DNA of 43,982 bases from Macrostomum lignano (Eukaryota), in assembly GCA_002269645.1 (NCBI GenBank), contig NIVC01004501.1, positions 1 through 43,982 on the forward strand. Reading direction: 5' to 3'. A program made the position numbers and the translations under genes. This document shows, in pieces, positions 19,301 to 41,771 of this stretch. The notes below the pieces were generated by a model. That model was not told where the DNA came from. It searched no databases and worked only from the letters and a program-made list of their open reading frames with translations. Position 1 is the stretch's first letter. Each line of letters starts with the position of its first letter.

Positions 19301-20976
19301 CTGGGTTCACACAGTCATCACACTGGGTTCACACAGTCATCAGTCTGGGTTCACACAGTCTTCAGGCTGAGTTCACACAGTCATTAGACTGGGTTCATAC
19401 AGACATCAGACTGGGTTCATACAGACATCAAACTGGGTTCATACAGACATCAGACTGGGTTTACACAGACATCAGACTGGGTTTACACAGACATCAGACT
19501 GGGTTTACACAGACATCAGACTAGGTTCACACAGACATCAGACTGGGTTCACACAGACATCAGACTGGGTTTACACAGACATCAGACTGGGTTCACACAG
19601 TCTTCAGGCTGAGTTCACACAGTCATTAGACTGGGTTCATACAGACATCAAACTGGGTTCATACAGACATCAGACTGGGTTTACACAGACATCAGACTGG
19701 GTTTACACAGACATCAGACTGGGTTTACACAGACATCAGACTAGGTTCACACAGACATCAGACTGGGTTCACACAGACATCAGACTGGGTTTACACAGAC
19801 ATCAGACTGGGTTCACACAGTCTTCAGGCTGAGTTCACACAGTCATTAGACTGGGTTCATACAGACATCAAACTGGGTTCATACAGACATCAGACTGGGT
19901 TTACACAGACATCAGACTGGGTTTACACAGACATCAGACTGGGTTTACACAGACATCAGACTAGGTTCACACAGACATCAGACTGGGTTCACACAGACAT
20001 CAGACTGGGTTTACACAGACATCAGACTGGGTTTACACAGACATCAGACTGGGTTCACTGCTTGCCCTGTCGACTTTCGCTTTTATTTGCGCCAGTGACC
20101 GAAGCCAAGTTAATAACTGGCAGGAAAAATTTCCTCTCTCACCTGCTTCATCAGCATAGTAAAGAGGAACCTGTGCCTGCTGTGCTGCATCTCAGTGTGC
20201 CAGGCGAAGCACACAGTCAGCAGACCGGAGGCCGCGAAGCCGGTCACGAAGCGGAACACTGCGTAGGCGGCCACCTCCTTGACGAAGGCCGCGATGACGC
20301 CGCCGACAGCTAGATTGACGCAGGCCAACAGGTAGGCGTTGCGCCGGCCCCACCGATCCGACAAAATCCCATAGCTTGTGCTGCCAAATAGGAAGCCGAG
20401 CATAAACATCACCTTGACAACCGTTGCTATGGGTTCCCAGCCACAGACAAGACCGAACGATTCCGTCACAGTTTTAGACATCGGGTCGGAGCTGTTGAAG
20501 AGAAAGCGCTGGCAAGGTATTCCGGCTGCAGAAGGAACGCTGCCGTTCTGAGTCGCCTCTGGCGCCGATGTCGGACCGGGAATCTGACAGCTGCTCAAGT
20601 TTGACACCGAGGCCCAGTCGATTGAAGCTGCAGCTGAGGAATTATTCGAGCCGAAACCGGTGGCGCAGACGAACGGGCGTCTCAGCATGGTGAAATTCAC
20701 CGAGTGAATCTGCATCGACGGAAACGCGACAGCCAGCGCGATTGTGACCATGAAGGCGGCCTGGTACTTGTGTCGCCGGCCCACCACATTCATGTACTCG
20801 TCAAATGTCGGCTCCAAGCTGCCGCCCGACATCAAAGACTCCATCGAGCCGGCTGTCCGCTTCAACTGGTGCTGCTCAACTTTATCTAAGTCGTTTCCTT
20901 CTTCATCATCATCCTCGTCCGCTCCATCTAGCTGGTCTTTGATCTCGCCGACAGCTTGTTTTACAGGCTCCTGCAT
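16349..20976 (-). CDS. SLC22-family (MFS) organic cation/solute transporter, 692 aa, intact
   Basis: Exons 20976-20143, 18998-18852, 18065-17716, 17096-16349 total 2079 nt, in frame. Cys-containing first extracellular loop (CQRFLF...[10 protein letters not shown]), motif [37 protein letters not shown]...DTLDEAE are typical of SLC22. Confidence 0.95.
17157..17521. repeat. Second array of the same 21-nt minisatellite, SLC22 intron 3
   Basis: Same unit and orientation as 14341-15240, including the GATGCACAGG variant. Confidence 0.95.
18255..18502 (+). mobile_element. Same SINE family, copy in SLC22 intron 2
   Basis: Near-collinear with 5570-5790 and the reverse complement of 9612-9890. Confidence 0.8.
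19120..20058. repeat. 22-nt minisatellite (ACAGACATCAGACTGGGTTTAC) with higher-order structure, SLC22 intron 1
   Basis: The variant unit TCTTCAGGCTGAG recurs at 19359, 19601 and 19821. Confidence 0.95.
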
Positions 20977-29500: not shown

Positions 29501-32500
29501 AAGTAGTCCTTGCACCCCTTCACTCCACATCCCCTCTCTCCACACCCCTCACTACACACCCCTCACTCTACACCCCCCTCCCTTCACACCCCTCACTCAC
29601 ACCTCCTCACTCCACATTCCCCACTCCACACCTCCACTCCGCGACCCCTCACTCTACACTCCCTACTCTACCGCAGGCACGCATCGGCAGGCCTCACAGA
29701 GCGCAGTCGGCGCAGCTTGGTCCGCCTCATGTACAAACTAGCTCTGGAAGGCATCGATCTACAAGCCAGAAACGTCGCCGGAGACACCGCCTTGCTGACT
29801 GCGGCCAACCCGACTTCGGCGATGCCGTCGGCCTCCTTGGCAACTCTTCCACCGGACCGTCAACTACTGGAACATCTTCTTCGCCTGGGCGTCGACGCGG
29901 GACTTCGCGGAGCCGGTGGTCGCGGTCTGGCCTCGTCTAGCTTCGGTCCCGACCTCCGACTGCAGCGAGGCGGCTGCCCGCGTTTTCGGGTGCCGGGACT
30001 GACAGCGGCGGTCCGCGACGCCGACGTCGGTCGAGTGCGTCGCTGGTTGGCGAGCCTTGGCCGTGTTGAAGCGGTCAGCAACGGCAGGAGCCTCCTTCAA
30101 CTGGCAAGGGAAGCTGGTGGCGAGGTGGCCCGTCTGGTGGAGGCGGCCAGGCAGACGACGGAGTTCGCTGCGGCGGTGATGGCCGGAGATTTGGTTGCCA
30201 TGCGGCGATGGCTGGCGATGGGCGGCGCAAATCGACTCGTCAACGCCTGGTTCCGGTAAGGGACTTTAATCTCTGAGGCAGAGCAGCTCAGCCTTTAGAG
30301 AGTCTGACTTTGCACCAGAGTACCCAAAGTATTAATTTGGGACTTGTGCAGGAATATTGGATTGGGGCTTGACTTTCTATGTCGCCCATGAGGCCCAACC
30401 TCCCAACCTACCTACAAGAGTTTGTTCATGCCTAACAATGAAAAGCCATGGCAAAGTCGCTGACAGCACAACAGGTCGTTTGGACGGGCATCTAGGGCTG
30501 CGATGGTGACTTGCTCGTTGCTGATTTTGAAGGCGTCGTGCAGCAAGACAGCCTCGAACAACTCCTGGAACAAGGCCGCCCTCTGGCGGCCTTGAACTGA
30601 AGAAGGCAACTCAGGCAAGCCCGCGACGATGCCGCAGATTTTCGTAGACGCTGGACAACAGACCACCCGGATTAACGAACTGCTGACATCGACAGGCGCA
30701 CACACTCGATGTTTTGTAGACGCCGACGCCCTGGACTCGGTCGGCTTGCCCTGTGGCGCTGTTTTCATAAGACCTGACAGCGTTTATTTTGTTTTTTTTG
30801 TAGACCCGTGCCTGCGTTCGAATGTCCGTGTGCGCGTACTCTGGGATCAGCAGAATAGTCTCTCCTGCTTCTTATCGCTAAGTCGGCTTCGGCACTCCTT
30901 CTGCAAGCTAGCAAACACTCCCAACAACCTTAAAATTATGGGTTTTTATCTAGCTACCTCTACCTCATAGCTTACCTACACCATCCCCATCCGCCTCATT
31001 CCTGCTCACCCACTCACCCGCCTTCAGCTTCCACTTCGTTGGCCTCAGTACAGACGGCCTGACCCCTGAGTTCGCCAACCGCCCTTTGCTCGCCGCAGCC
31101 GTAGAGTTCGCCCCAGCCAGCGTTGTCGACTGTCTGCTTCGCTTTGGAGCTCGTCTCGACGTCCAGTGCGAGGAGAGACACCCCTGCGGCCCGGCCGCTT
31201 TCTGGGCATTCAACGACGCGCCGTTTGGTGCGGCCGTAGGCGGGACGGCCGTCGCCGAAACCGTAGCCGCCTGGGCCGACGCTCGGCATCTCAGAGACGA
31301 GCTCGGGCGCACGCTTCTGCATGCAGCCATCGAGTGGCGCGAACTCAACGATGAGGAAACGTCGTCAACGCCTAACTCAGAAGATTTAGCATCGGGGGCT
31401 AAGTCGCCTGCGCCTCCAGCGACTCTATTACAATCGAAATCGTTTCATTCAATGCTGAACTCAGTTCGGCCTGAGTCTTCGCTTAGACGGTGCCTCAGAT
31501 CGACGTCATTTTACACGTCGTCTAAAGTGCAACCGTCCACCGAGTCCAAAGTGCAACCGTCCACCGAGTACAAAGTGCAACCGTCCACCGAGTACAAAGT
31601 GCAACCGTCCACCGAGTCCAAAGTGCAACCATCCACCGATTACAAAGTGCAACCGTCCACCGAGTCCAAAGTACAACCGTCCACCGAGTCCAAAGTGCAA
31701 CTGTCCACCGAGTCCAAAGTGTCGCTGTCAGAGGCCAGACATCGAGTTATTCGCCGTCTGTTAGCACGAGGGGCACCATTGGCCGCTCGCGACGCGTCAA
31801 GTCGAACAGCTCGAGACTTGGCTAGTGCCGTCGGTGACTTTGAAGTCTGCCGCCTGCTCGACAATCACGTGACCGAGTTGGCCCGTCGAGGCGACCTAGA
31901 CAGCGTCGAGCAACTGATTCTCGAAGCCTACGACGCAGGTTTCGACGGCGCCACGGCGTTAATCGCCGCTCGGCGCCACGATCGCGATCTGCTGCGCTTG
32001 CTAGGCGAGGCGCCGCGCTACCGGCGCCAAATCGCCGCGCTACACGCATCCATAGCCACCGGAGGCGCCGTCGCCGCTGCTGCTTTTGCTCGATTTGCCG
32101 GTGAGAAACGGCTGGCGCTCGGCTTGGACCGACGCGGCCGCAACCTCCTGCACGCCGCCGCGCTGTCCGGCGACGCCGCACTGGTCGGCTCCGTGGCCGA
32201 GCGGCTTCCTGCGCTGGCTGGACAGGGCGACTGTCTGGGTCGGACACCGGCGCACTATGCGGCTTGTCTGGCCGACTCGAAAGCGACGCTGTCGGCAATT
32301 TCTCGAGCGATCGGCGGTTTGGACATGTCGATTAAAGATGCCGTGAGGATTTGCGATTGACTTCTTTAGTAAACTGTCTATATATGCTCTCGACGAGTAG
32401 CAAGTGGCGTTATTAGTCAGGTTGAGTGAAAAAACTGATGGCTTTATTATGACTCTAATATTCAAATTGGGCGCCCATTTTTTCAATTGGACACCTATGT

Positions 32501-33199: not shown

Positions 33200-33850
33200 A
33201 TACATCTCAACCCCAGCCCACTAGCTGATGCGGCTTTCCTTACCCCTCAACCCCACTCCACTATTTTATGCGGCTTTCCTTACCCTCAACCCCACTCCAC
33301 TATCTTATGCGGCTTTCCTTACCCCACCCCATTATCTGATACGGCTTTCCTTACCCCTCAACCCCACCCCATTATCTGATACGGCTTTCCTTACCCCTCA
33401 ACCCCACCCCATTATCTGATACGGCTTTCCTTACCCCTCAACCCCACCCCATTATCTGATACGGCTTTCCTTACCCCTCAACCCCACCCCACTATCTGAT
33501 GTGACTTTGCTTACCCCTCAACCCCGCCCCACTATCTGATGCGGCTTTCCTTACCCCTCAACCCACTCCACTATCTGATGCGGCTTTCCTTACCCCTCAA
33601 CCCCGCCCTACTATCTGATGTGACTTTCCTTACCCCTCAACCCCACCCCACTATCTGATGCGAATTTTCTTACCCCTACAACCCCGCCCCACTATCTGAT
33701 GCGGCTTTGCTTACCCCTCAACCCCACCCCACTATCTGATGCGAATTTTCTTACCCCTACAACCCCGCCCCACTATCTGATGCGGCTTTCCTTACCCCTC
33801 AACCCCGCCCCACTATCTGATGCGGCTTTCCTTATCCCTTAACCCCGCTC
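33200..33850. repeat. 40-nt minisatellite (GCGGCTTTCCTTACCCCTCAACCCCACCCCACTATCTGAT) just after the ankyrin stop
   Basis: Period 40 (acggctttcc at 33341, 33381 and 33421). Confidence 0.95.
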
Positions 33851-34085
33851 CCACTAATCTGATTGGACCTTTCTCACCCCTCCATTGCCAATGCTAGCAA
33901 AATTTTCAAGCTAACGTCCGTCAAAAAATCTGAAACTTTGATTTGAATCCCAAATAAATTTGAACATCCAAACACAGGTGTTAAAGTTATCATCATTTTA
34001 TTTGTCATTTTCTTTTATTACCATCAATGTACATGCTCAGTCAGAATGGTGTAACATTCGATTAGCGAGTGCTCGACCTCGTCAG

Positions 34086-34844
34086 TCAGTTGTCGTAGAC
34101 ATAGCCAATCGGTGGGCCGCCCTCAACCTCTTCGCACATGATCTCGTACTTCAGGCACAGTCGCAGCACCTGCAGTCTGTACTTTTGCTGCGACTCGTCG
34201 CTTAGGTACCGCCGAATGCGTCTCTCGCCCATGCCTAGTTCCGATGACGTCACAGCAGCTTTGCCGTCGCGAGCGTCGCTAGATTCATCGTCGACTAGTG
34301 TAGCGGCCATTGTTGTGGAGACAATGACAGCCAGCAGTAGGAGAGCTGAGGGTTGGAGTAGACCGACTGAATTGATGGATTTGACAAATAGTGGTGAGTT
34401 CGTGTAGGATTGAGCTCGTTTTTACTCAGCTATAGAATTTCTGTTTGCCTCAATTGAGCTGCAGTGAATCGTGAATGTCTGCTTGAAAGACGAGACACAG
34501 CAGGGCGTTGCGATTTTAAACAACAAGAAGGAGCTCTATTTTTGCCAAAATACAAGCTAGTCCTTGTGCAGTTCGTAATTACTGCCTGTATGCTAAGCAT
34601 CCACAACTTTATCACCCATCACCTCAGCACCCACCACCTCAGCACCCACCACCTAAGCACCCACCACCTAAGCACCCACCACCTAAGTAGCACCCAGTTA
34701 CTCAGCACCCACCACCTAAGCACCCACCATCTAAGTAGCACTCAGTTATTCAGCACCCACCACCTCAACATTCACCACCTCAGCACCCATTCTAAGATTA
34801 ATAAAAAACAAAATAAAGTTTTTCTCACCAAAGAATGACTCCAT
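34086..34844 (-). CDS. Small secreted prepropeptide, 98 aa (signal peptide - acidic pro-region - RRIRR - 40-aa two-Cys peptide)
   Basis: Exon 1 is 34844-34829 (aaaaacATGGAGTCATTCTTTG|gtgaga, phase 1). Exon 2 is 34366-34086 (aattcag|TCGGT). Together 297 nt, in frame: MESFFVGLLQPSALLLLAVIVSTTMAATLVDDESSDARDGKAAVTSSELGMGERRIRRYLSDESQQKYRLQVLRLCLKYEIMCEEVEGGPPIGYVYDN*. Two AATAAA signals downstream (34019-34014, 34002-33997). Confidence 0.8.
34612..34790. repeat. 15-nt minisatellite (CAGCACCCACCACCT) inside the prepropeptide intron
   Basis: Direct inspection. Confidence 0.9.
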
Positions 34845-35712
34845 GTTTTTGGAAGTTACGTTTTTAAGTTTTTGCTTCTGTATTTATTGTTGTTGCTGTT
34901 ATCTAATCAGCACAGATCGGGACACCAAAGATGATTAGACAAGGTACCGACAGTCCCTCCAAATGATTGCAGATGTAGTCATATTCCCAGTCACAGTCAG
35001 TCTCAGCCAGTCAGAGTCCGGCTATTCTCATTTGCTCCTTGTGCTCCGACTCGCTGAAGAGAGAGAATCGGCATTGATGCAGAGCAAACTGGTGAAAAAA
35101 TTCCTAAGAATATTAATAAGGCCCAACTTCATTAGTGCCTCTGAGAGTTCATTAGCCGGTAAAGGTGCTTATAGCTGCTGGGGCACCAGGGGCTAATGCT
35201 GACTTTATGACCTCCATTCGTGCAGGATAATTTCCTGAAGAAGATCTCCGTCTTCCTATTGCCGGATGCAATCTCCAGCCGTCAGATAATATCCGCAGTA
35301 GCCAGGCCATCCGGCAAGGGGCTAAGCCAGCTGCCTTATCTATTAATCTGGCTGTCCCCAAGCTGTGGAAGTAACGAACCGTTGACGACACGCATGTAAC
35401 CAATTCCTTGTGTACTCTTGATTGGAATGACCAGCGCTGACCCAGCTGAGCCCGTCTCGAATCCAGCTGCCCGAGCGATTCCTAATCCTGTAATCTCTGT
35501 TCTGAAATTGATCAAGCCGATATCGTCAGACATGTACGCTCGTACACTGATAAATATATATATATCGTTTCGATAGAGGCCTTAATCTTATTCATTTCCT
35601 GATGAATTTGGTGCAAAAATCGACTGTACAAAATGAAAACTAATGTTAATACAAAAACTATTAAGTTTGTTTAACTGGAGTCAAACAACACCGCATCTTT
35701 TTTCAAAACCGA

Positions 35713-36270
35713 TCAGTTCCACAGCCTGCCAAAATCAACTCCGAAGGAGGAGTCGAAGACGCTGAATCCGACCTTTCTGCCCAGCTGGAAACCAGTGCCG
35801 AGCACCTTGATCGTCAGCGAGTCGTCCACGATCCCGATGGCGGACGAGACGCCCAGACCGAGGTTGACGTCGAAGGCGGACACGCGACCTCCAGCGAAGA
35901 CGAGCTTCGCCCCGTAACCGAGGCATGTCGGCCCGGCGAATGCCGACACCTCGGCGCCGAACACGGTGAAATCGATGGTGTCGAGCGGCGTCTCTCCAGA
36001 GTTGACCTTCATTAAGCCGGCTCCGATGAGGTACTCGATCTTCGGGCCGGTGTAATTCTTGGTCACATTCACCGCGGTCTCGATGAATCCGACCGTGTGT
36101 TCTTCAAATTTCTGCAGGCGACCTTCAACTGCTACGACGTAGACAGACGATGTGTAGTCCATAGAGTCGTAATCCGCTGCCGTCAGGATCTCGTCGACGC
36201 TGTACTCAACATCAGCATTCAGATTGTTTTCCAATTTTTCCTTGATTGTTGTCTCTAGGCCCGCAGTCAT
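35713..36270 (-). CDS. Uncharacterised 185-aa protein with acidic N-terminus and Gly-rich, beta-strand-like C-terminal half
   Basis: Clean ORF with a good start context (gttaccATGa) and GC-rich codons against AT-rich flanks. A probable 5' UTR intron spans 36516-36295 (AAG|GTAAGT ... ttttag|). No family recognised with confidence. Confidence 0.8.
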   Translation of the reverse strand: MTAGLETTIKEKLENNLNADVEYSVDEILTAADYDSMDYTSSVYVVAVEGRLQKFEEHTVGFIETAVNVTKNYTGPKIEYLIGAGLMKVNSGETPLDTIDFTVFGAEVSAFAGPTCLGYGAKLVFAGGRVSAFDVNLGLGVSSAIGIVDDSLTIKVLGTGFQLGRKVGFSVFDSSFGVDFGRLWN

Positions 36271-39630: not shown

Positions 39631-41771
39631 TCAACTATCAGACGATCTCCAAGCCACTCGTCGAAAACCAGCGCAGCATCCGGCTGAAGCAGCCTCATCT
39701 TCGTCTACCTGCTGCTGCTGAGCACTGATGGAGCGGGTCAGCTGCACAGTGTTAGCCGGCCTCACGGGTGTCCGTCCCGATCGGCCATCGACCAGGAGCC
39801 GATGGCTGTAGGTCTTGTAGATGGCACGAATCAGCTGATTGAAAGCGGCTTCAACATTGGTGGTGTCCAGTGCGCTGGTCTCCAAGTAGGACAGGCCATT
39901 GTCGCTAGCAAAATTTGTTGCTTCAGTTGTTGTCACCTGGCGAGCGAATTCCTGGTCGACCTTGTTGCCAACCAGAATCACTATGGACTCTTCGCTGCTG
40001 TTCTGGCGAAGTTCGTCAAGCCAGTAGTTCAGGCTGTCGAAGGAGGCCCGGCTGGAGATTGAGAACACCAGGAGGGCACCCAGGCTGTCGCGGTAGAATG
40101 CCTTCGTCACCGCCCGGAACCGATCTTGGCCTGGGGGGGGGGAGGCGAGGTTAATTTCTGATCTTCTGATCTTTTGAGATTGACCTACGGTTTCATTGTT
40201 TGGTGGCAGTGGCGGATTCAGGATTTTTAAATTGGGGGGACGGATTGGCCCCAAAAAAAGCCCAAAACTAAAAAACTCCCCTCTTATATGCAAGTCCAGC
40301 CCCGGCAAAACAAAAGAGGGGGCGGCTGCCTCCTCCCCTGGATCTGCCACTGTTTGGTGGGAAGGATGGGAGAAGGGAGAGAGAGAAGGGGAGAGGGGGA
40401 AGGGAGAGAGGAAGGGAAGAGAGGGAAGAGAGAGAAGGAAGGGAGAGAGGGAAGGAAGAGAGAGGGAAGGGAGAGAGAGGGAAGGGAGAGAGAGGGAAGG
40501 GAGAGAGAGGGAAGGAGAGAGAGGAAGGGAGAGAGAGGGAAGGGAGAGAGAGAGGGAGAGAGAGGGAAGGGAGAGAGAGGGAAGAGAGAGAGGAAGGGAG
40601 AGAGAGGGAAGGAGAGAGGAAGGAAGAGAGAGGGAAGGAGAGAGAGGGAAGGGAGAGAGGGAAGGAAGAGAGAGGGAAGGGAGAGAGAGGGAAGGAGAGA
40701 GAGGAAGGGAGAGAGAGAGGGAAGGGAGAGAGGGAAGGGAGAGAGGAAAGGAAGAGAGAGGGAAGGGAGAGAGAGGGAAGGGAGAGAGAGAGAGAAGGGA
40801 GAGAGAGGAAAGGGAGAGAGGGAAGGGAGAGAGGGAAGGGAGAGAGAGGAAAGGGAGAGAGAGGAAAGGGAGAGAGAGGAAAGGGAGAGAGAGGAAAGGA
40901 AGAGGGAATGGAGAGAGGGAAGAGAGAAAGAGGAAAGGGAGAGAGAGGAAAGGGAGAGAGAGGAAAGGGAGAGAGAGGAAAGGGAGAGAGAGGAAAGGAA
41001 GAGGGAAGGGAGAGAGGGAAGAGAGAAAGAGGAAAGGGAGAGGGAAGGGAGAGACGGAAGGGAGAGAGAGGAAAGGGAGAGAGAGGAAAGGGAGAGAGAG
41101 GAAAGGGAGAGAGAGGAAAGGAAGAGGGAATGGAGAGAGGGAAGAGAGAAAGAGGAAAGGGAGAGAGAGGAAAGGGAGAGAGAGGAAAGGGAGAGAGAGG
41201 AAAGGGAGAGAGAGGAAAGGAAGAGGGAAGGGAGAGAGGGAAGAGAGAAAGAGGAAAGGGGAGGGAAGGGAGAGACGGAAGGGAGAGAGAGGGGAGAGAG
41301 AGGAAAGGGAGAGAGAGGAAAGGGAGAGAGAGGAAAGGAAGAGGGAAGGGAGAGAGGGAAGAGAGAAAGAGGAAAGGAAGAGGGAAGGGAGAGAGGGAAG
41401 AGAGAAAGAGGAAAGGGAGAGGGAAGGGAGAGACGGAAGGGAGAAGAGGAAGGAAAGGAAGAAAGTGCGATATAGGAGCAGAGGGCTTTAGGTTAGCCAG
41501 AAATGACTGTCAAGATACGTAAAAAAATTCGAATTCAAAAAGGCGCTTCACAAACACAAGAAAAGTACAGTGCAGACTCACCTGCAGTGTCCCAGATCTG
41601 ACAGCGCACAGTGCGGCCATCCACAGGCACAATTTTATTCGAGAACTCGACTCCTATAGTAGTCTGGCTTTCTATTCGGAATTCATTCTTAGTAAACCTG
41701 CTGATTAGATTCGTTTTACCAACGCCACTGCTGCCGATTACAATAATCTTAAATAAGCAATCGTATTCCAT
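39631..41771 (-). CDS. RAB11-like: Rab11-like small GTPase, divergent, 229 aa, 2 exons
   Basis: Exons 41771-41582 and 40130-39631 total 690 nt. G1 GSSGVGKT, G2 TTIGVEF, G3 WDTAGQD, G4 NKVD, G5 ETSAL. N-terminus [11 protein letters not shown] and a CC motif near the C-terminus. Confidence 0.93.
40207..40352. mobile_element. hAT-type MITE (146 bp) in the Rab intron
   Basis: TIRs CAGTGGCGGATTCAGG / CCTGGATCTGCCACTG match at 14/16. A perfect 8-bp TSD TTTGGTGG lies at 40199-40206 and 40353-40360. Confidence 0.9.
40361..41465. repeat. ~1.1-kb polypurine (GA-rich) array in the Rab intron
   Basis: Almost exclusively G and A on the plus strand; explains the REGRERK ORFs. Confidence 0.97.

What the first reader, a model, noticed from the sequence alone, without database searches (positions are those of the whole stretch)
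34086..34844. Hidden two-exon gene encoding a candidate novel neuropeptide/hormone precursor
Seen: the ORF track shows only a 74-aa fragment. In frame upstream lies a hydrophobic signal-like stretch (LLQPSALLLLAVIVSTTMA). A 16-nt exon at 34844-34829 (aaaaacATGG start, G|GTGAGA donor) splices in the right phase onto the acceptor at 34366. The result is a 98-aa protein: signal peptide, acidic spacer, RRIRR, then the 40-aa peptide YLSDESQQKYRLQVLRLCLKYEIMCEEVEGGPPIGYVYDN with a single C-X6-C pair. Two AATAAA signals follow. Established: signal + acidic pro-region + R-X-R-R furin/prohormone convertase site + short Cys-bridged peptide is the architecture of peptide hormones and some antimicrobial or toxin peptides. 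Inference: I cannot match the mature peptide to a named family. The C-X6-C spacing recalls allatostatin-C, but the long C-terminal tail and absent amidation Gly do not.
Basis: partly seen in the sequence, partly recalled or inferred. Interest (0 to 1): 0.78.

Follow-up and report, generated by a model that had tools for sequence, protein, structure and literature searches.

The report
Annotated orphan secreted-peptide gene, flatworm
The "hidden" two-exon gene is real, but GenBank already lists it as an uncharacterised 91-residue protein of the flatworm Macrostomum lignano; it looks like a small secreted pro-protein with no detectable relatives, and nothing yet shows it is a neuropeptide.

Summary
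The window is the whole contig NIVC01004501.1 of the Macrostomum lignano Mlig_3_7 assembly. GenBank already annotates a gene spanning exactly 34844..34086 on the minus strand. It is PAA47294.1 / A0A267DF70, "hypothetical protein BOX15_Mlig027809g2", 91 aa. That annotation was built from RNA-seq-guided transcript models.

The deposited model uses an acceptor 21 nt further downstream (exon 2 starts at 34345, not 34366). The product is therefore 91 aa (MESFFALLLLAVIVSTTMA|ATL...), not 98 aa. The 98-aa form is absent from a 15-billion-protein collection.

The protein has a textbook-looking signal peptide, an acidic 27-aa spacer, an RRIRR site (R-X-R-R) and an acidic 40-aa C-terminal peptide with C-X6-C. 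Codon usage supports the reading frame.

No true homologue was found in any protein, Pfam, PDB, metagenome or literature search. No expression data could be retrieved.

Best reading: a lineage-restricted secretory pre-pro-protein. The neuropeptide or hormone role is possible but untested. M. lignano also has many orphan secreted gland proteins, so the architecture is not specific. Interest is modest.

The parts
34881..34888 (-). TATA-like AATAAATA, 37 nt upstream of the ATG; possible core promoter element (inferred only)
   Evidence: In the paralogous locus L002 the motif reads AAAAAATA, so this is weak.
34829..34844 (-). Exon 1 coding part: ATGGAGTCATTCTTTG (M-E-S-F-F plus the first base of codon 6), followed by donor GTGAGA
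   Evidence: It is the same start as GenBank gene PAA47294.1, whose range is 34844..34086. The donor matches the M. lignano consensus GT[G/A]AG.
34346..34828 (-). Intron of the deposited model (483 nt). It contains a 15/48-nt tandem array at 34613-34789.
   Evidence: The array differs by a 105-nt indel in paralogous locus L002.
34346..34366 (-). 21-nt segment between two in-phase acceptors.
   Evidence: The older model P0004 uses the 34345 acceptor as well.
34305..34345 (-). Start of exon 2. Together with exon 1 it encodes the predicted signal peptide MESFFALLLLAVIVSTTMA (residues 1-19).
   Evidence: The hydrophobic core FFALLLLAVIV has mean Kyte-Doolittle hydropathy 3.39, followed by a polar c-region STTMA. 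The -3/-1 rule is met for cleavage after A19. This is a heuristic; SignalP was not available.
34224..34304 (-). Acidic 27-aa spacer or pro-region ATLVDDESSDARDGKAAVTSSELGMGE (pI 4.05)
34209..34223 (-). RRIRR: R-X-R-R furin/prohormone-convertase-type motif (two dibasic pairs)
   Evidence: The motif is read from the sequence; cleavage is inferred.
34089..34208 (-). C-terminal 40-aa peptide YLSDESQQKYRLQVLRLCLKYEIMCEEVEGGPPIGYVYDN. It is acidic (pI 4.49), has one C-X6-C pair and no C-terminal Gly.
   Evidence: The AlphaFold single-sequence model has low confidence (pLDDT 56.9).
34086..34088 (-). Stop codon TGA
33997..34019 (-). Two AATAAA poly(A) signals (34019-34014 and 34002-33997), 67 and 84 nt after the stop
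35713..36270 (-). Upstream same-strand neighbour: an intact 185-aa ORF annotated in GenBank as a separate hypothetical protein. The older 286-aa model A0A1I8G3H0 fused it to exon 2 of the target gene.
   Evidence: No Pfam or PDB match.
35432..35501 (-). Small bridging exon (NRDYRIRNRSGSWIRDGLSWVSA) used only by the older fused model. Both donors of that model are weak (GTTGAT leaving the 185-aa ORF, GTCATT leaving this exon).

Best explanation
This is a genuine, compact, two-exon gene of Macrostomum lignano, already annotated as BOX15_Mlig027809g2 / PAA47294.1. The gene spans about 0.85 kb and the mRNA is about 0.4 kb. It encodes a 91-residue, lineage-restricted secretory pre-pro-protein.

Shown:
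- The gene's coordinates, the deposited exon structure and the 91-aa product.
- The annotation derives from RNA-seq-guided transcripts.
- The frame has coding-type codon usage.
- A second, roughly 99 % identical copy exists at a paralogous locus.

Inferred mechanism:
1. The N-terminal 19 residues (MESFFALLLLAVIVSTTMA) direct the protein into the ER and are removed by signal peptidase, leaving a 72-aa acidic pro-protein.
2. In the secretory pathway a furin/PC-type convertase probably cuts after RRIRR. This would release a 27-aa acidic spacer and a 40-aa acidic C-terminal peptide.
3. The two cysteines of that peptide (C-X6-C) form either an intramolecular loop or an intermolecular bridge.

The secreting cell type and the target are unknown. 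I consider an exocrine or otherwise lineage-specific secreted product at least as likely as a neuronal or endocrine signal.
For: - Identity of the window and the gene. The contig is NIVC01004501.1, the gene range is 34844..34086, and the 91-aa product matches exactly my join of exon 1 to 34345.
- Provenance of the annotation: StringTie/TACO/BLAT-mapped transcripts, then TBONE and TransDecoder (PMC5730564).
- Splice signals: the donor is the only GT[G/A]AG among 78 phase-compatible candidates. Both candidate acceptors are CAG.
- Codon-usage log-likelihood: +0.37 bits/codon in frame, negative in the five other frames, rank 2 of 203.
- Signal-peptide-like N-terminus, acidic spacer, R-X-R-R site and peptide properties.
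- Poly(A) signals.
- The paralogous copy keeps the ATG, donor, both acceptors and an intact ORF.
Against: - No RNA reads or junction counts could be inspected directly. Transcript support is taken from the annotation's provenance.
- Signal-peptide cleavage is a heuristic call, with no SignalP run. The n-region has no positive charge.
- No homologue exists to show purifying selection. The two paralogous copies are too similar to test constraint: 3 coding and 3 intronic substitutions.
- The paralogous copy in L002 carries no gene call.
- Convertase cleavage is inferred from a motif only.
- A 91-aa TransDecoder ORF in an expressed transcript could still be non-functional.
Confidence: 0.6

Rival explanations
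1. One reading: a true neuropeptide or peptide-hormone precursor. It would be made in neurons or endocrine cells, cut by PC2-type convertase at RRIRR, and its 40-aa disulfide-looped peptide would act on a receptor.
For: Signal-like N-terminus, acidic spacer, dibasic/R-X-R-R site, short Cys-containing C-terminal peptide and small precursor size. This is a special case of the best explanation and is not excluded by any result.
Against: - No homologue and no conserved mature peptide in 5.8 billion or 1.84 billion-protein searches, in Pfam or in metagenome contigs.
- The peptide has no amidation Gly, there is a single cleavage site, and the peptide is long and acidic.
- There are no expression data.
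- The architecture is equally typical of non-neural secreted proteins. In M. lignano, 31 of 76 prostate-limited transcripts had no BLAST hit, and 38 of the 65 with a predicted ORF had a predicted signal peptide (PMC5977470).
Confidence: 0.17
2. A single-pass membrane micro-protein. The N-terminal hydrophobic segment (F4-V23) would be an uncleaved signal anchor, tethering the acidic 68-aa tail to a membrane.
For: The 19-residue window FALLLLAVIVSTTMAATLV has mean hydropathy 2.37 and could just span a bilayer. No positive n-region marks it as a classical signal peptide.
Against: The strongly hydrophobic core is only 11 residues. It is followed by a polar STT and a small-residue -3/-1 site (T-M-A), which is the standard h-region/c-region layout of cleaved signals.
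Confidence: 0.1
3. Exon 2 is the last exon of a larger gene. The upstream 185-aa ORF (35713-36270) would be spliced through a small exon (35501-35432) to the 34345 acceptor, as in UniProt A0A1I8G3H0 (286 aa). The hydrophobic stretch would then be internal.
For: Such a model exists in UniProt for a paralogous copy. All its pieces are present in the window.
Against: - Both of its donors are weak (GGA|GTTGAT and CTG|GTCATT) and do not fit GT[G/A]AG.
- It discards the 185-aa ORF's own last 7 codons and stop.
- The later RNA-seq-guided annotation splits the locus into two genes with different transcript-cluster names, Mlig030894 and Mlig027809.
- Pfam does not find the Ysc84 domain of its UniProt name.
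Confidence: 0.06
4. A transcribed but non-functional or very young ORF, with the protein features arising by chance in a repeat-rich intergenic transcript.
For: - There is no homologue anywhere.
- The product is only 91 aa.
- The surroundings are saturated with tandem repeats.
- The paralogous copy is not annotated.
Against: Coding-type codon usage is specific to the frame. A Kozak-like ATG context, consensus donor, clean signal-peptide layout and poly(A) signals all co-occur. The ORF is intact in both copies.
Confidence: 0.07

Closest known systems
GenBank PAA47294.1 / UniProt A0A267DF70, hypothetical protein BOX15_Mlig027809g2 (Macrostomum lignano)
   Same: It is this gene: same contig, same range 34844..34086, same ATG, donor and stop.
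   Different: The deposited entry carries no functional annotation.
Generic secretory pro-proteins or prohormones processed by furin/PC-type convertases (signal peptide, acidic pro-piece, R-X-K/R-R, C-terminal peptide)
   Same: The order of the parts and the cleavage motif.
   Different: No sequence relationship to any named prohormone. There is no amidation signal, only a single peptide copy, and the tissue of expression is unknown.
Allatostatin-C / somatostatin-type peptides
   Same: A C-X6-C spacing preceded by a basic cleavage site.
   Different: In those peptides the ring sits at the very C-terminus of a roughly 14-15-aa peptide. Here 17 residues precede the ring and 15 follow it. There is no motif similarity and no Pfam hit.
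Orphan secreted gland proteins of M. lignano, e.g. prostate-limited putative seminal fluid proteins (Weber et al. 2018, PMC5977470)
   Same: Small, signal-peptide-bearing and without detectable homologues or domains.
   Different: Mlig027809 was not found in that paper's supplementary files as held here. No expression pattern is known for it.
UniProt A0A1I8G3H0, 'Ysc84 domain-containing protein' (286 aa, older M. lignano gene model)
   Same: Its C-terminal 86 residues are the paralogous copy of this protein from the 34345 acceptor onward, with one V->M change.
   Different: It fuses the upstream 185-aa ORF to this exon through weak splice sites. This is probably a prediction artefact.

Membership tests
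GenBank gene BOX15_Mlig027809g2 (PAA47294.1) | Exact product sequence and genomic range | tested here: met
   My join 34844-34829 + 34345-34086 gives a 91-aa sequence found by exact look-up. The gene range in the record equals the finding's coordinates.
Neuropeptide / peptide-hormone precursors (class) | Cleavable N-terminal signal peptide | tested here: inconclusive
   The hydropathy profile and the -3/-1 rule fit cleavage after A19. No trained predictor such as SignalP was available, and the n-region lacks positive charge.
Neuropeptide / peptide-hormone precursors (class) | Mono- or dibasic convertase sites flanking the bioactive peptide | tested here: met
   RRIRR lies directly N-terminal of the 40-mer, and the C-terminus is the stop codon. 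The motif is present; cleavage was not shown.
Neuropeptide / peptide-hormone precursors (class) | Mature peptide conserved across species while the spacer diverges | tested here: not met
   No orthologue was found at all. The only hit, P0005, is a repetitive 2178-aa protein that matches the signal and spacer region at 23-28 % identity. Caveat: transcriptomes of other Macrostomum species may not be in the libraries.
Neuropeptide / peptide-hormone precursors (class) | Expression in neurons or endocrine cells, and a cognate receptor | not testable with these tools
   No expression table containing Mlig027809 could be retrieved.
Neuropeptide / peptide-hormone precursors (class) | C-terminal Gly amidation signal (common, not obligatory) | tested here: not met
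   The peptide ends ...GYVYDN-stop.
Allatostatin-C / somatostatin family | C-X6-C ring at the C-terminal end of a short peptide, with the family's sequence motif | tested here: not met
   The spacing is present, but the ring is internal, with a 15-residue tail. No Pfam match at E<=10. The motif comparison rests on my own knowledge of the family.
Furin / proprotein-convertase substrates | R-X-[K/R]-R motif in a protein that enters the secretory pathway | tested here: met
   R-I-R-R lies downstream of a signal-like segment. Actual cleavage cannot be tested here.
Ysc84/SYLF-domain protein (older fused model A0A1I8G3H0) | Detectable Ysc84 domain and credible splice junctions joining the 185-aa ORF to exon 2 | tested here: not met
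   No Pfam family for P0001 or P0004 at E<=10. The donors GTTGAT and GTCATT are off consensus. The newer annotation splits the genes.
SL trans-spliced mRNA using the spliced leader's terminal ATG | The leader's ATG in frame with the ORF at the acceptor | tested here: not met
   The spliced leader ends in ...GCATG (PMC8629364). Joining it to 34366 or 34345 puts that ATG in the wrong frame, giving a short ORF ...SYCWLSLSPQQWPLH*.

The most novel reading that the evidence does not exclude
The 40-aa acidic C-X6-C peptide released at RRIRR is a genuine Macrostomum-specific signalling peptide, either a neuropeptide/hormone or a mating-partner-manipulating seminal peptide. It would have no relatives in other animals, making it a de novo or very fast-evolving ligand family.
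Probability: 0.17. Interest if true: 0.5.

Novelty: new member of a known kind. Interest (0 to 1): 0.25.

Why it matters
If the peptide proved to be a signalling molecule, it would add a lineage-specific ligand to a transgenic flatworm model. It would also be a tractable case of orphan peptide-gene origin.

As it stands, the result is mainly a calibration. A reader working from raw sequence correctly rebuilt a 16-nt first exon and a two-exon secreted-protein gene that an ORF scan misses. However, the gene has been public since 2017 as a hypothetical protein. The splice acceptor was misplaced by 21 nt. The functional label goes beyond the evidence.

Tried and rejected
- **Word-indexed homologue search with the 98-aa protein:** nothing at E<=10. 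It did not even return the gene's own product. The 91-aa protein sits in a 90 % cluster whose representative is the unrelated 185-aa neighbour, bridged by the fused 286-aa model. This negative is therefore weaker than it looks for very close relatives.
- **Full HMMER scan of 1.84 billion representatives with exon 2:** one hit, P0005. I rejected it because five weak repeated stretches at 23-28 % identity cover only the signal and spacer region of a 2178-aa repeat protein.
- **Exact look-ups:** The 74-aa ORF is not on record.
- **Rfam, Pfam and PDB sequence searches:** nothing.
- **Metagenome contig scan:** 593 pattern matches, none confirmed.
- **Literature:** the identifiers and peptide strings occur in no full text. 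The supplements of four papers, as held here, lack Mlig027809; a fifth paper has no supplements held.
- **Paralogue comparison for selection:** the copies are about 99 % identical, which is uninformative.
- **AlphaFold on the 72-aa secreted part:** pLDDT 56.9, too poor to interpret. No fold search was run.
- **Bacterial promoter/terminator scan:** irrelevant for a eukaryote.
- **Spliced-leader ATG as initiator at either acceptor:** out of frame.
- **Upstream CAG at 34880-34878:** it would put the leader's ATG in frame and add MKQKLKNVTSKN. That AG is AA in the paralogue, so I dropped the idea.

Full report
**1. What is in the sequence**

On the minus strand the ORF scan lists only a 74-aa ORF, 34086-34310. 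Its frame stays open upstream through a hydrophobic stretch and is closed by a stop (..IAE*KRAQSYTNSPLFVKSINSVGLLQPSALLLL..).

- An ATG at 34844 sits in aaaaacATGG. Sixteen bases later comes TTG|GTGAGA.
- Joining 34844-34829 to an exon starting at 34366 (after TTCAG) is in phase.
- RRIRR is at 34223-34209, the 40-aa tail at 34208-34089 and the TGA at 34088-34086.
- The two AATAAA signals are at 34019-34014 and 34002-33997.

**2. Is it more than chance?**

I listed every ATG...GT pair within 5 kb upstream that would be phase-compatible with exon 2 and open in frame. There are 78.

I built a codon table from 587 codons of three other coding stretches in the window.

- The spliced CDS scores +0.37 bits/codon in frame.
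- It scores -0.38 and -0.46 in the other two sense frames, and is negative in all antisense frames.
- It ranks second of 203 stop-to-stop ORFs of at least 70 codons, behind one of the training ORFs.

The training set is small, so this is supportive rather than decisive.

**3. What the window is, and the key result**

An exact look-up of the neighbouring 185-aa ORF (35713-36270, minus) identified the window. It is the complete contig NIVC01004501.1 of GCA_002269645.1, the Mlig_3_7 assembly of the flatworm Macrostomum lignano.

The same look-up showed a called gene occupying locus positions that convert to window 34844..34086, with a 91-residue product. This was confirmed.

This suggested the next in-phase acceptor, CTCAG|CTCTCC, with exon 2 starting at 34345. 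The resulting sequence is MESFFALLLLAVIVSTTMAATLVDD...VYDN. Exact look-up finds it as PAA47294.1 / UniRef100_A0A267DF70, [quoted passage not shown]. The 98-aa form is not in the collection.

The gene is therefore already public and uncharacterised. It is "hidden" only from an ORF scan.

**4. How good is that annotation?**

The GenBank annotation of Mlig_3_7 was not produced ab initio. It is the "coregenes" subset of a genome-guided transcriptome:

- STAR-mapped RNA-seq was assembled with StringTie and TACO.
- BLAT-mapped de novo transcripts were added.
- Gene boundaries were cut by the TBONE pipeline using trans-splicing and poly(A) read evidence.
- ORFs were called by TransDecoder (PMC5730564).

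I could not see the reads themselves.

The acceptor at 34345 is also the one used by an older, independent model of a paralogous copy (P0004). It has the more pyrimidine-rich upstream tract. The two AGs are 21 nt apart and both are in phase, so minor use of 34366 cannot be excluded.

**5. The rival "larger gene" model**

UniProt A0A1I8G3H0 (286 aa, named "Ysc84 domain-containing") fuses three pieces: the upstream 185-aa ORF minus its last 7 codons, a small exon (window 35501-35432), and exon 2 from 34345.

- Read in the window, its two donors are GGA|GTTGAT and CTG|GTCATT. Neither fits GT[G/A]AG.
- Pfam finds no Ysc84 or any other domain in it.
- The later RNA-guided annotation gives the two parts different transcript-cluster names, Mlig030894 and Mlig027809.

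I treat the fusion as a probable prediction artefact (about 6 %).

The M. lignano spliced leader ends in ATG. Attached at 34366 or 34345, that ATG would be out of frame. Trans-splicing therefore does not offer an alternative start.

**6. The protein**

The 91-aa product has these parts:

| Part | Residues | Features |
|---|---|---|
| n-region | MES | uncharged to acidic |
| Hydrophobic core | FFALLLLAVIV | 11 residues, mean Kyte-Doolittle 3.39 |
| c-region | STTMA | -3/-1 rule met for cleavage before A20 |
| Spacer | 27 aa | acidic, pI 4.05 |
| Cleavage motif | RRIRR | P4-P1 = R-I-R-R, the furin-type R-X-K/R-R consensus; also two dibasic pairs |
| C-terminal peptide | 40 aa | acidic, pI 4.49, 4.7 kDa; Cys at positions 18 and 25 |

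The peptide ends in ...GYVYDN without a Gly amidation signal.

The 98-aa variant would merely insert VGLLQPS into the hydrophobic region. A single-sequence AlphaFold model of the 72-aa secreted part has pLDDT 56.9. I do not interpret it.

**7. Relatives**

None were found.

- The word-indexed search of 5.8 billion clusters returned nothing. It could not have returned the protein's own entry either, because that entry is clustered under the unrelated 185-aa representative.
- A full HMMER scan of 1.84 billion representatives gave one hit. It is a 2178-aa repeat protein whose five weak stretches (23-28 % identity) align only to the signal and spacer region. I reject it.
- Pfam, PDB sequences and Rfam were negative.
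- A scan of JGI metagenome contigs was negative.
- Full-text searches for the identifiers and for strings of the peptide were negative.

Within the species, a paralogous locus (L002, NIVC01002622.1) carries a roughly 99 % identical copy.

- Exon 1 has one change, F5I. Exon 2 has V->M plus one synonymous change.
- The intron has three substitutions and a 105-nt difference in its tandem array.
- The ATG, donor and both acceptors are intact.

That divergence is far too small to measure constraint. This fits the recent genome duplication of M. lignano.

**8. What it most likely does**

The layout is that of a secretory pre-pro-protein:

1. Co-translational ER entry and signal-peptidase cleavage (inferred, about 70 %).
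2. Probable convertase cleavage at RRIRR, with basic-residue trimming (inferred, about 45 %).
3. Release of an acidic 40-mer.

Whether that peptide is a neuronal or endocrine signal is open. I put it at about 17 %, for four reasons:

- Nothing beyond generic architecture supports it.
- The peptide is long, acidic and not amidated.
- No conserved counterpart exists.
- M. lignano expresses many small orphan secreted proteins in glands. In a prostate screen, 31 of 76 gland-limited transcripts had no BLAST hit, and 38 of 65 predicted proteins had a signal peptide (PMC5977470).

An anionic peptide is also a poor fit for a classical cationic antimicrobial peptide. That point rests on my own knowledge. 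The allatostatin-C comparison fails on ring position, length and motif.

**9. Novelty and verdict**

The gene model is not new. The protein is an uncharacterised orphan. The prohormone idea is a legitimate but untested hypothesis, one among several for a small secreted protein.

It was off by 21 nt at the acceptor and over-reached on function.

Interest is 0.25. The decisive data are junction reads, SignalP, orthologues in other Macrostomum species, in situ or single-cell expression, and peptidomics. They are listed under next steps, and none needs anything beyond routine work.

Noticed in passing
window 35713-36270 (-): Intact 185-aa ORF with the best codon-usage score in the window. GenBank annotates it as a hypothetical protein. 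It has no Pfam or PDB match, and near-identical copies (P0003) lie on two other contigs. It sits 868 nt upstream of the target gene on the same strand.
   Followed up: partly
protein cluster of P0001/P0002/P0004: The 91-aa protein and the unrelated 185-aa protein share one 90 % cluster because a fused 286-aa model bridges them. The representative lacks the 91-aa sequence, so representative-based homology searches cannot return this protein.
   Followed up: yes
window 31086-32360 (+): A 424-aa ORF with ankyrin repeats (Ank_2, E=1.6e-11) that includes a 24-bp tandem array at 31520-31721. It is not among the genes called for this stretch of the GenBank record.
   Followed up: no
window 20110-20976 (-): A 288-aa ORF whose C-terminal third matches MFS/Sugar_tr transporters (E=5e-12). 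It is probably one exon of a transporter gene.
   Followed up: no
window 39631-41270 (-): A called gene with Arf/Ras/Roc small-GTPase Pfam hits lies upstream on the same strand. The same neighbour order (GTPase, then the 185-aa gene, then the target copy) is kept at paralogous locus L002.
   Followed up: partly
window 34613-34789 (intron) and the whole window: The intron carries a 15/48-nt tandem array that is 105 nt longer in the paralogous locus. The window as a whole gives 43 TRF rows (some overlapping rows describe the same array), including 4-bp arrays of about 600 bp and 20-24-bp arrays of up to about 1.1 kb.
   Followed up: partly
window 34845-34880 (-): The frame is open for 13 codons upstream of the ATG (IQKQKLKNVTSKN). 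A CAG at 34880-34878 would put the spliced leader's terminal ATG in frame and add a lysine-rich n-region to the signal peptide. That AG is AA in the paralogous copy, so this is probably coincidence.
   Followed up: partly
window 33206-33863: A 40-bp tandem array of 16.6 copies starts about 130 nt beyond the gene's second poly(A) signal. It generates the short repetitive + strand ORFs (MRLSLPLNP...).
   Followed up: no
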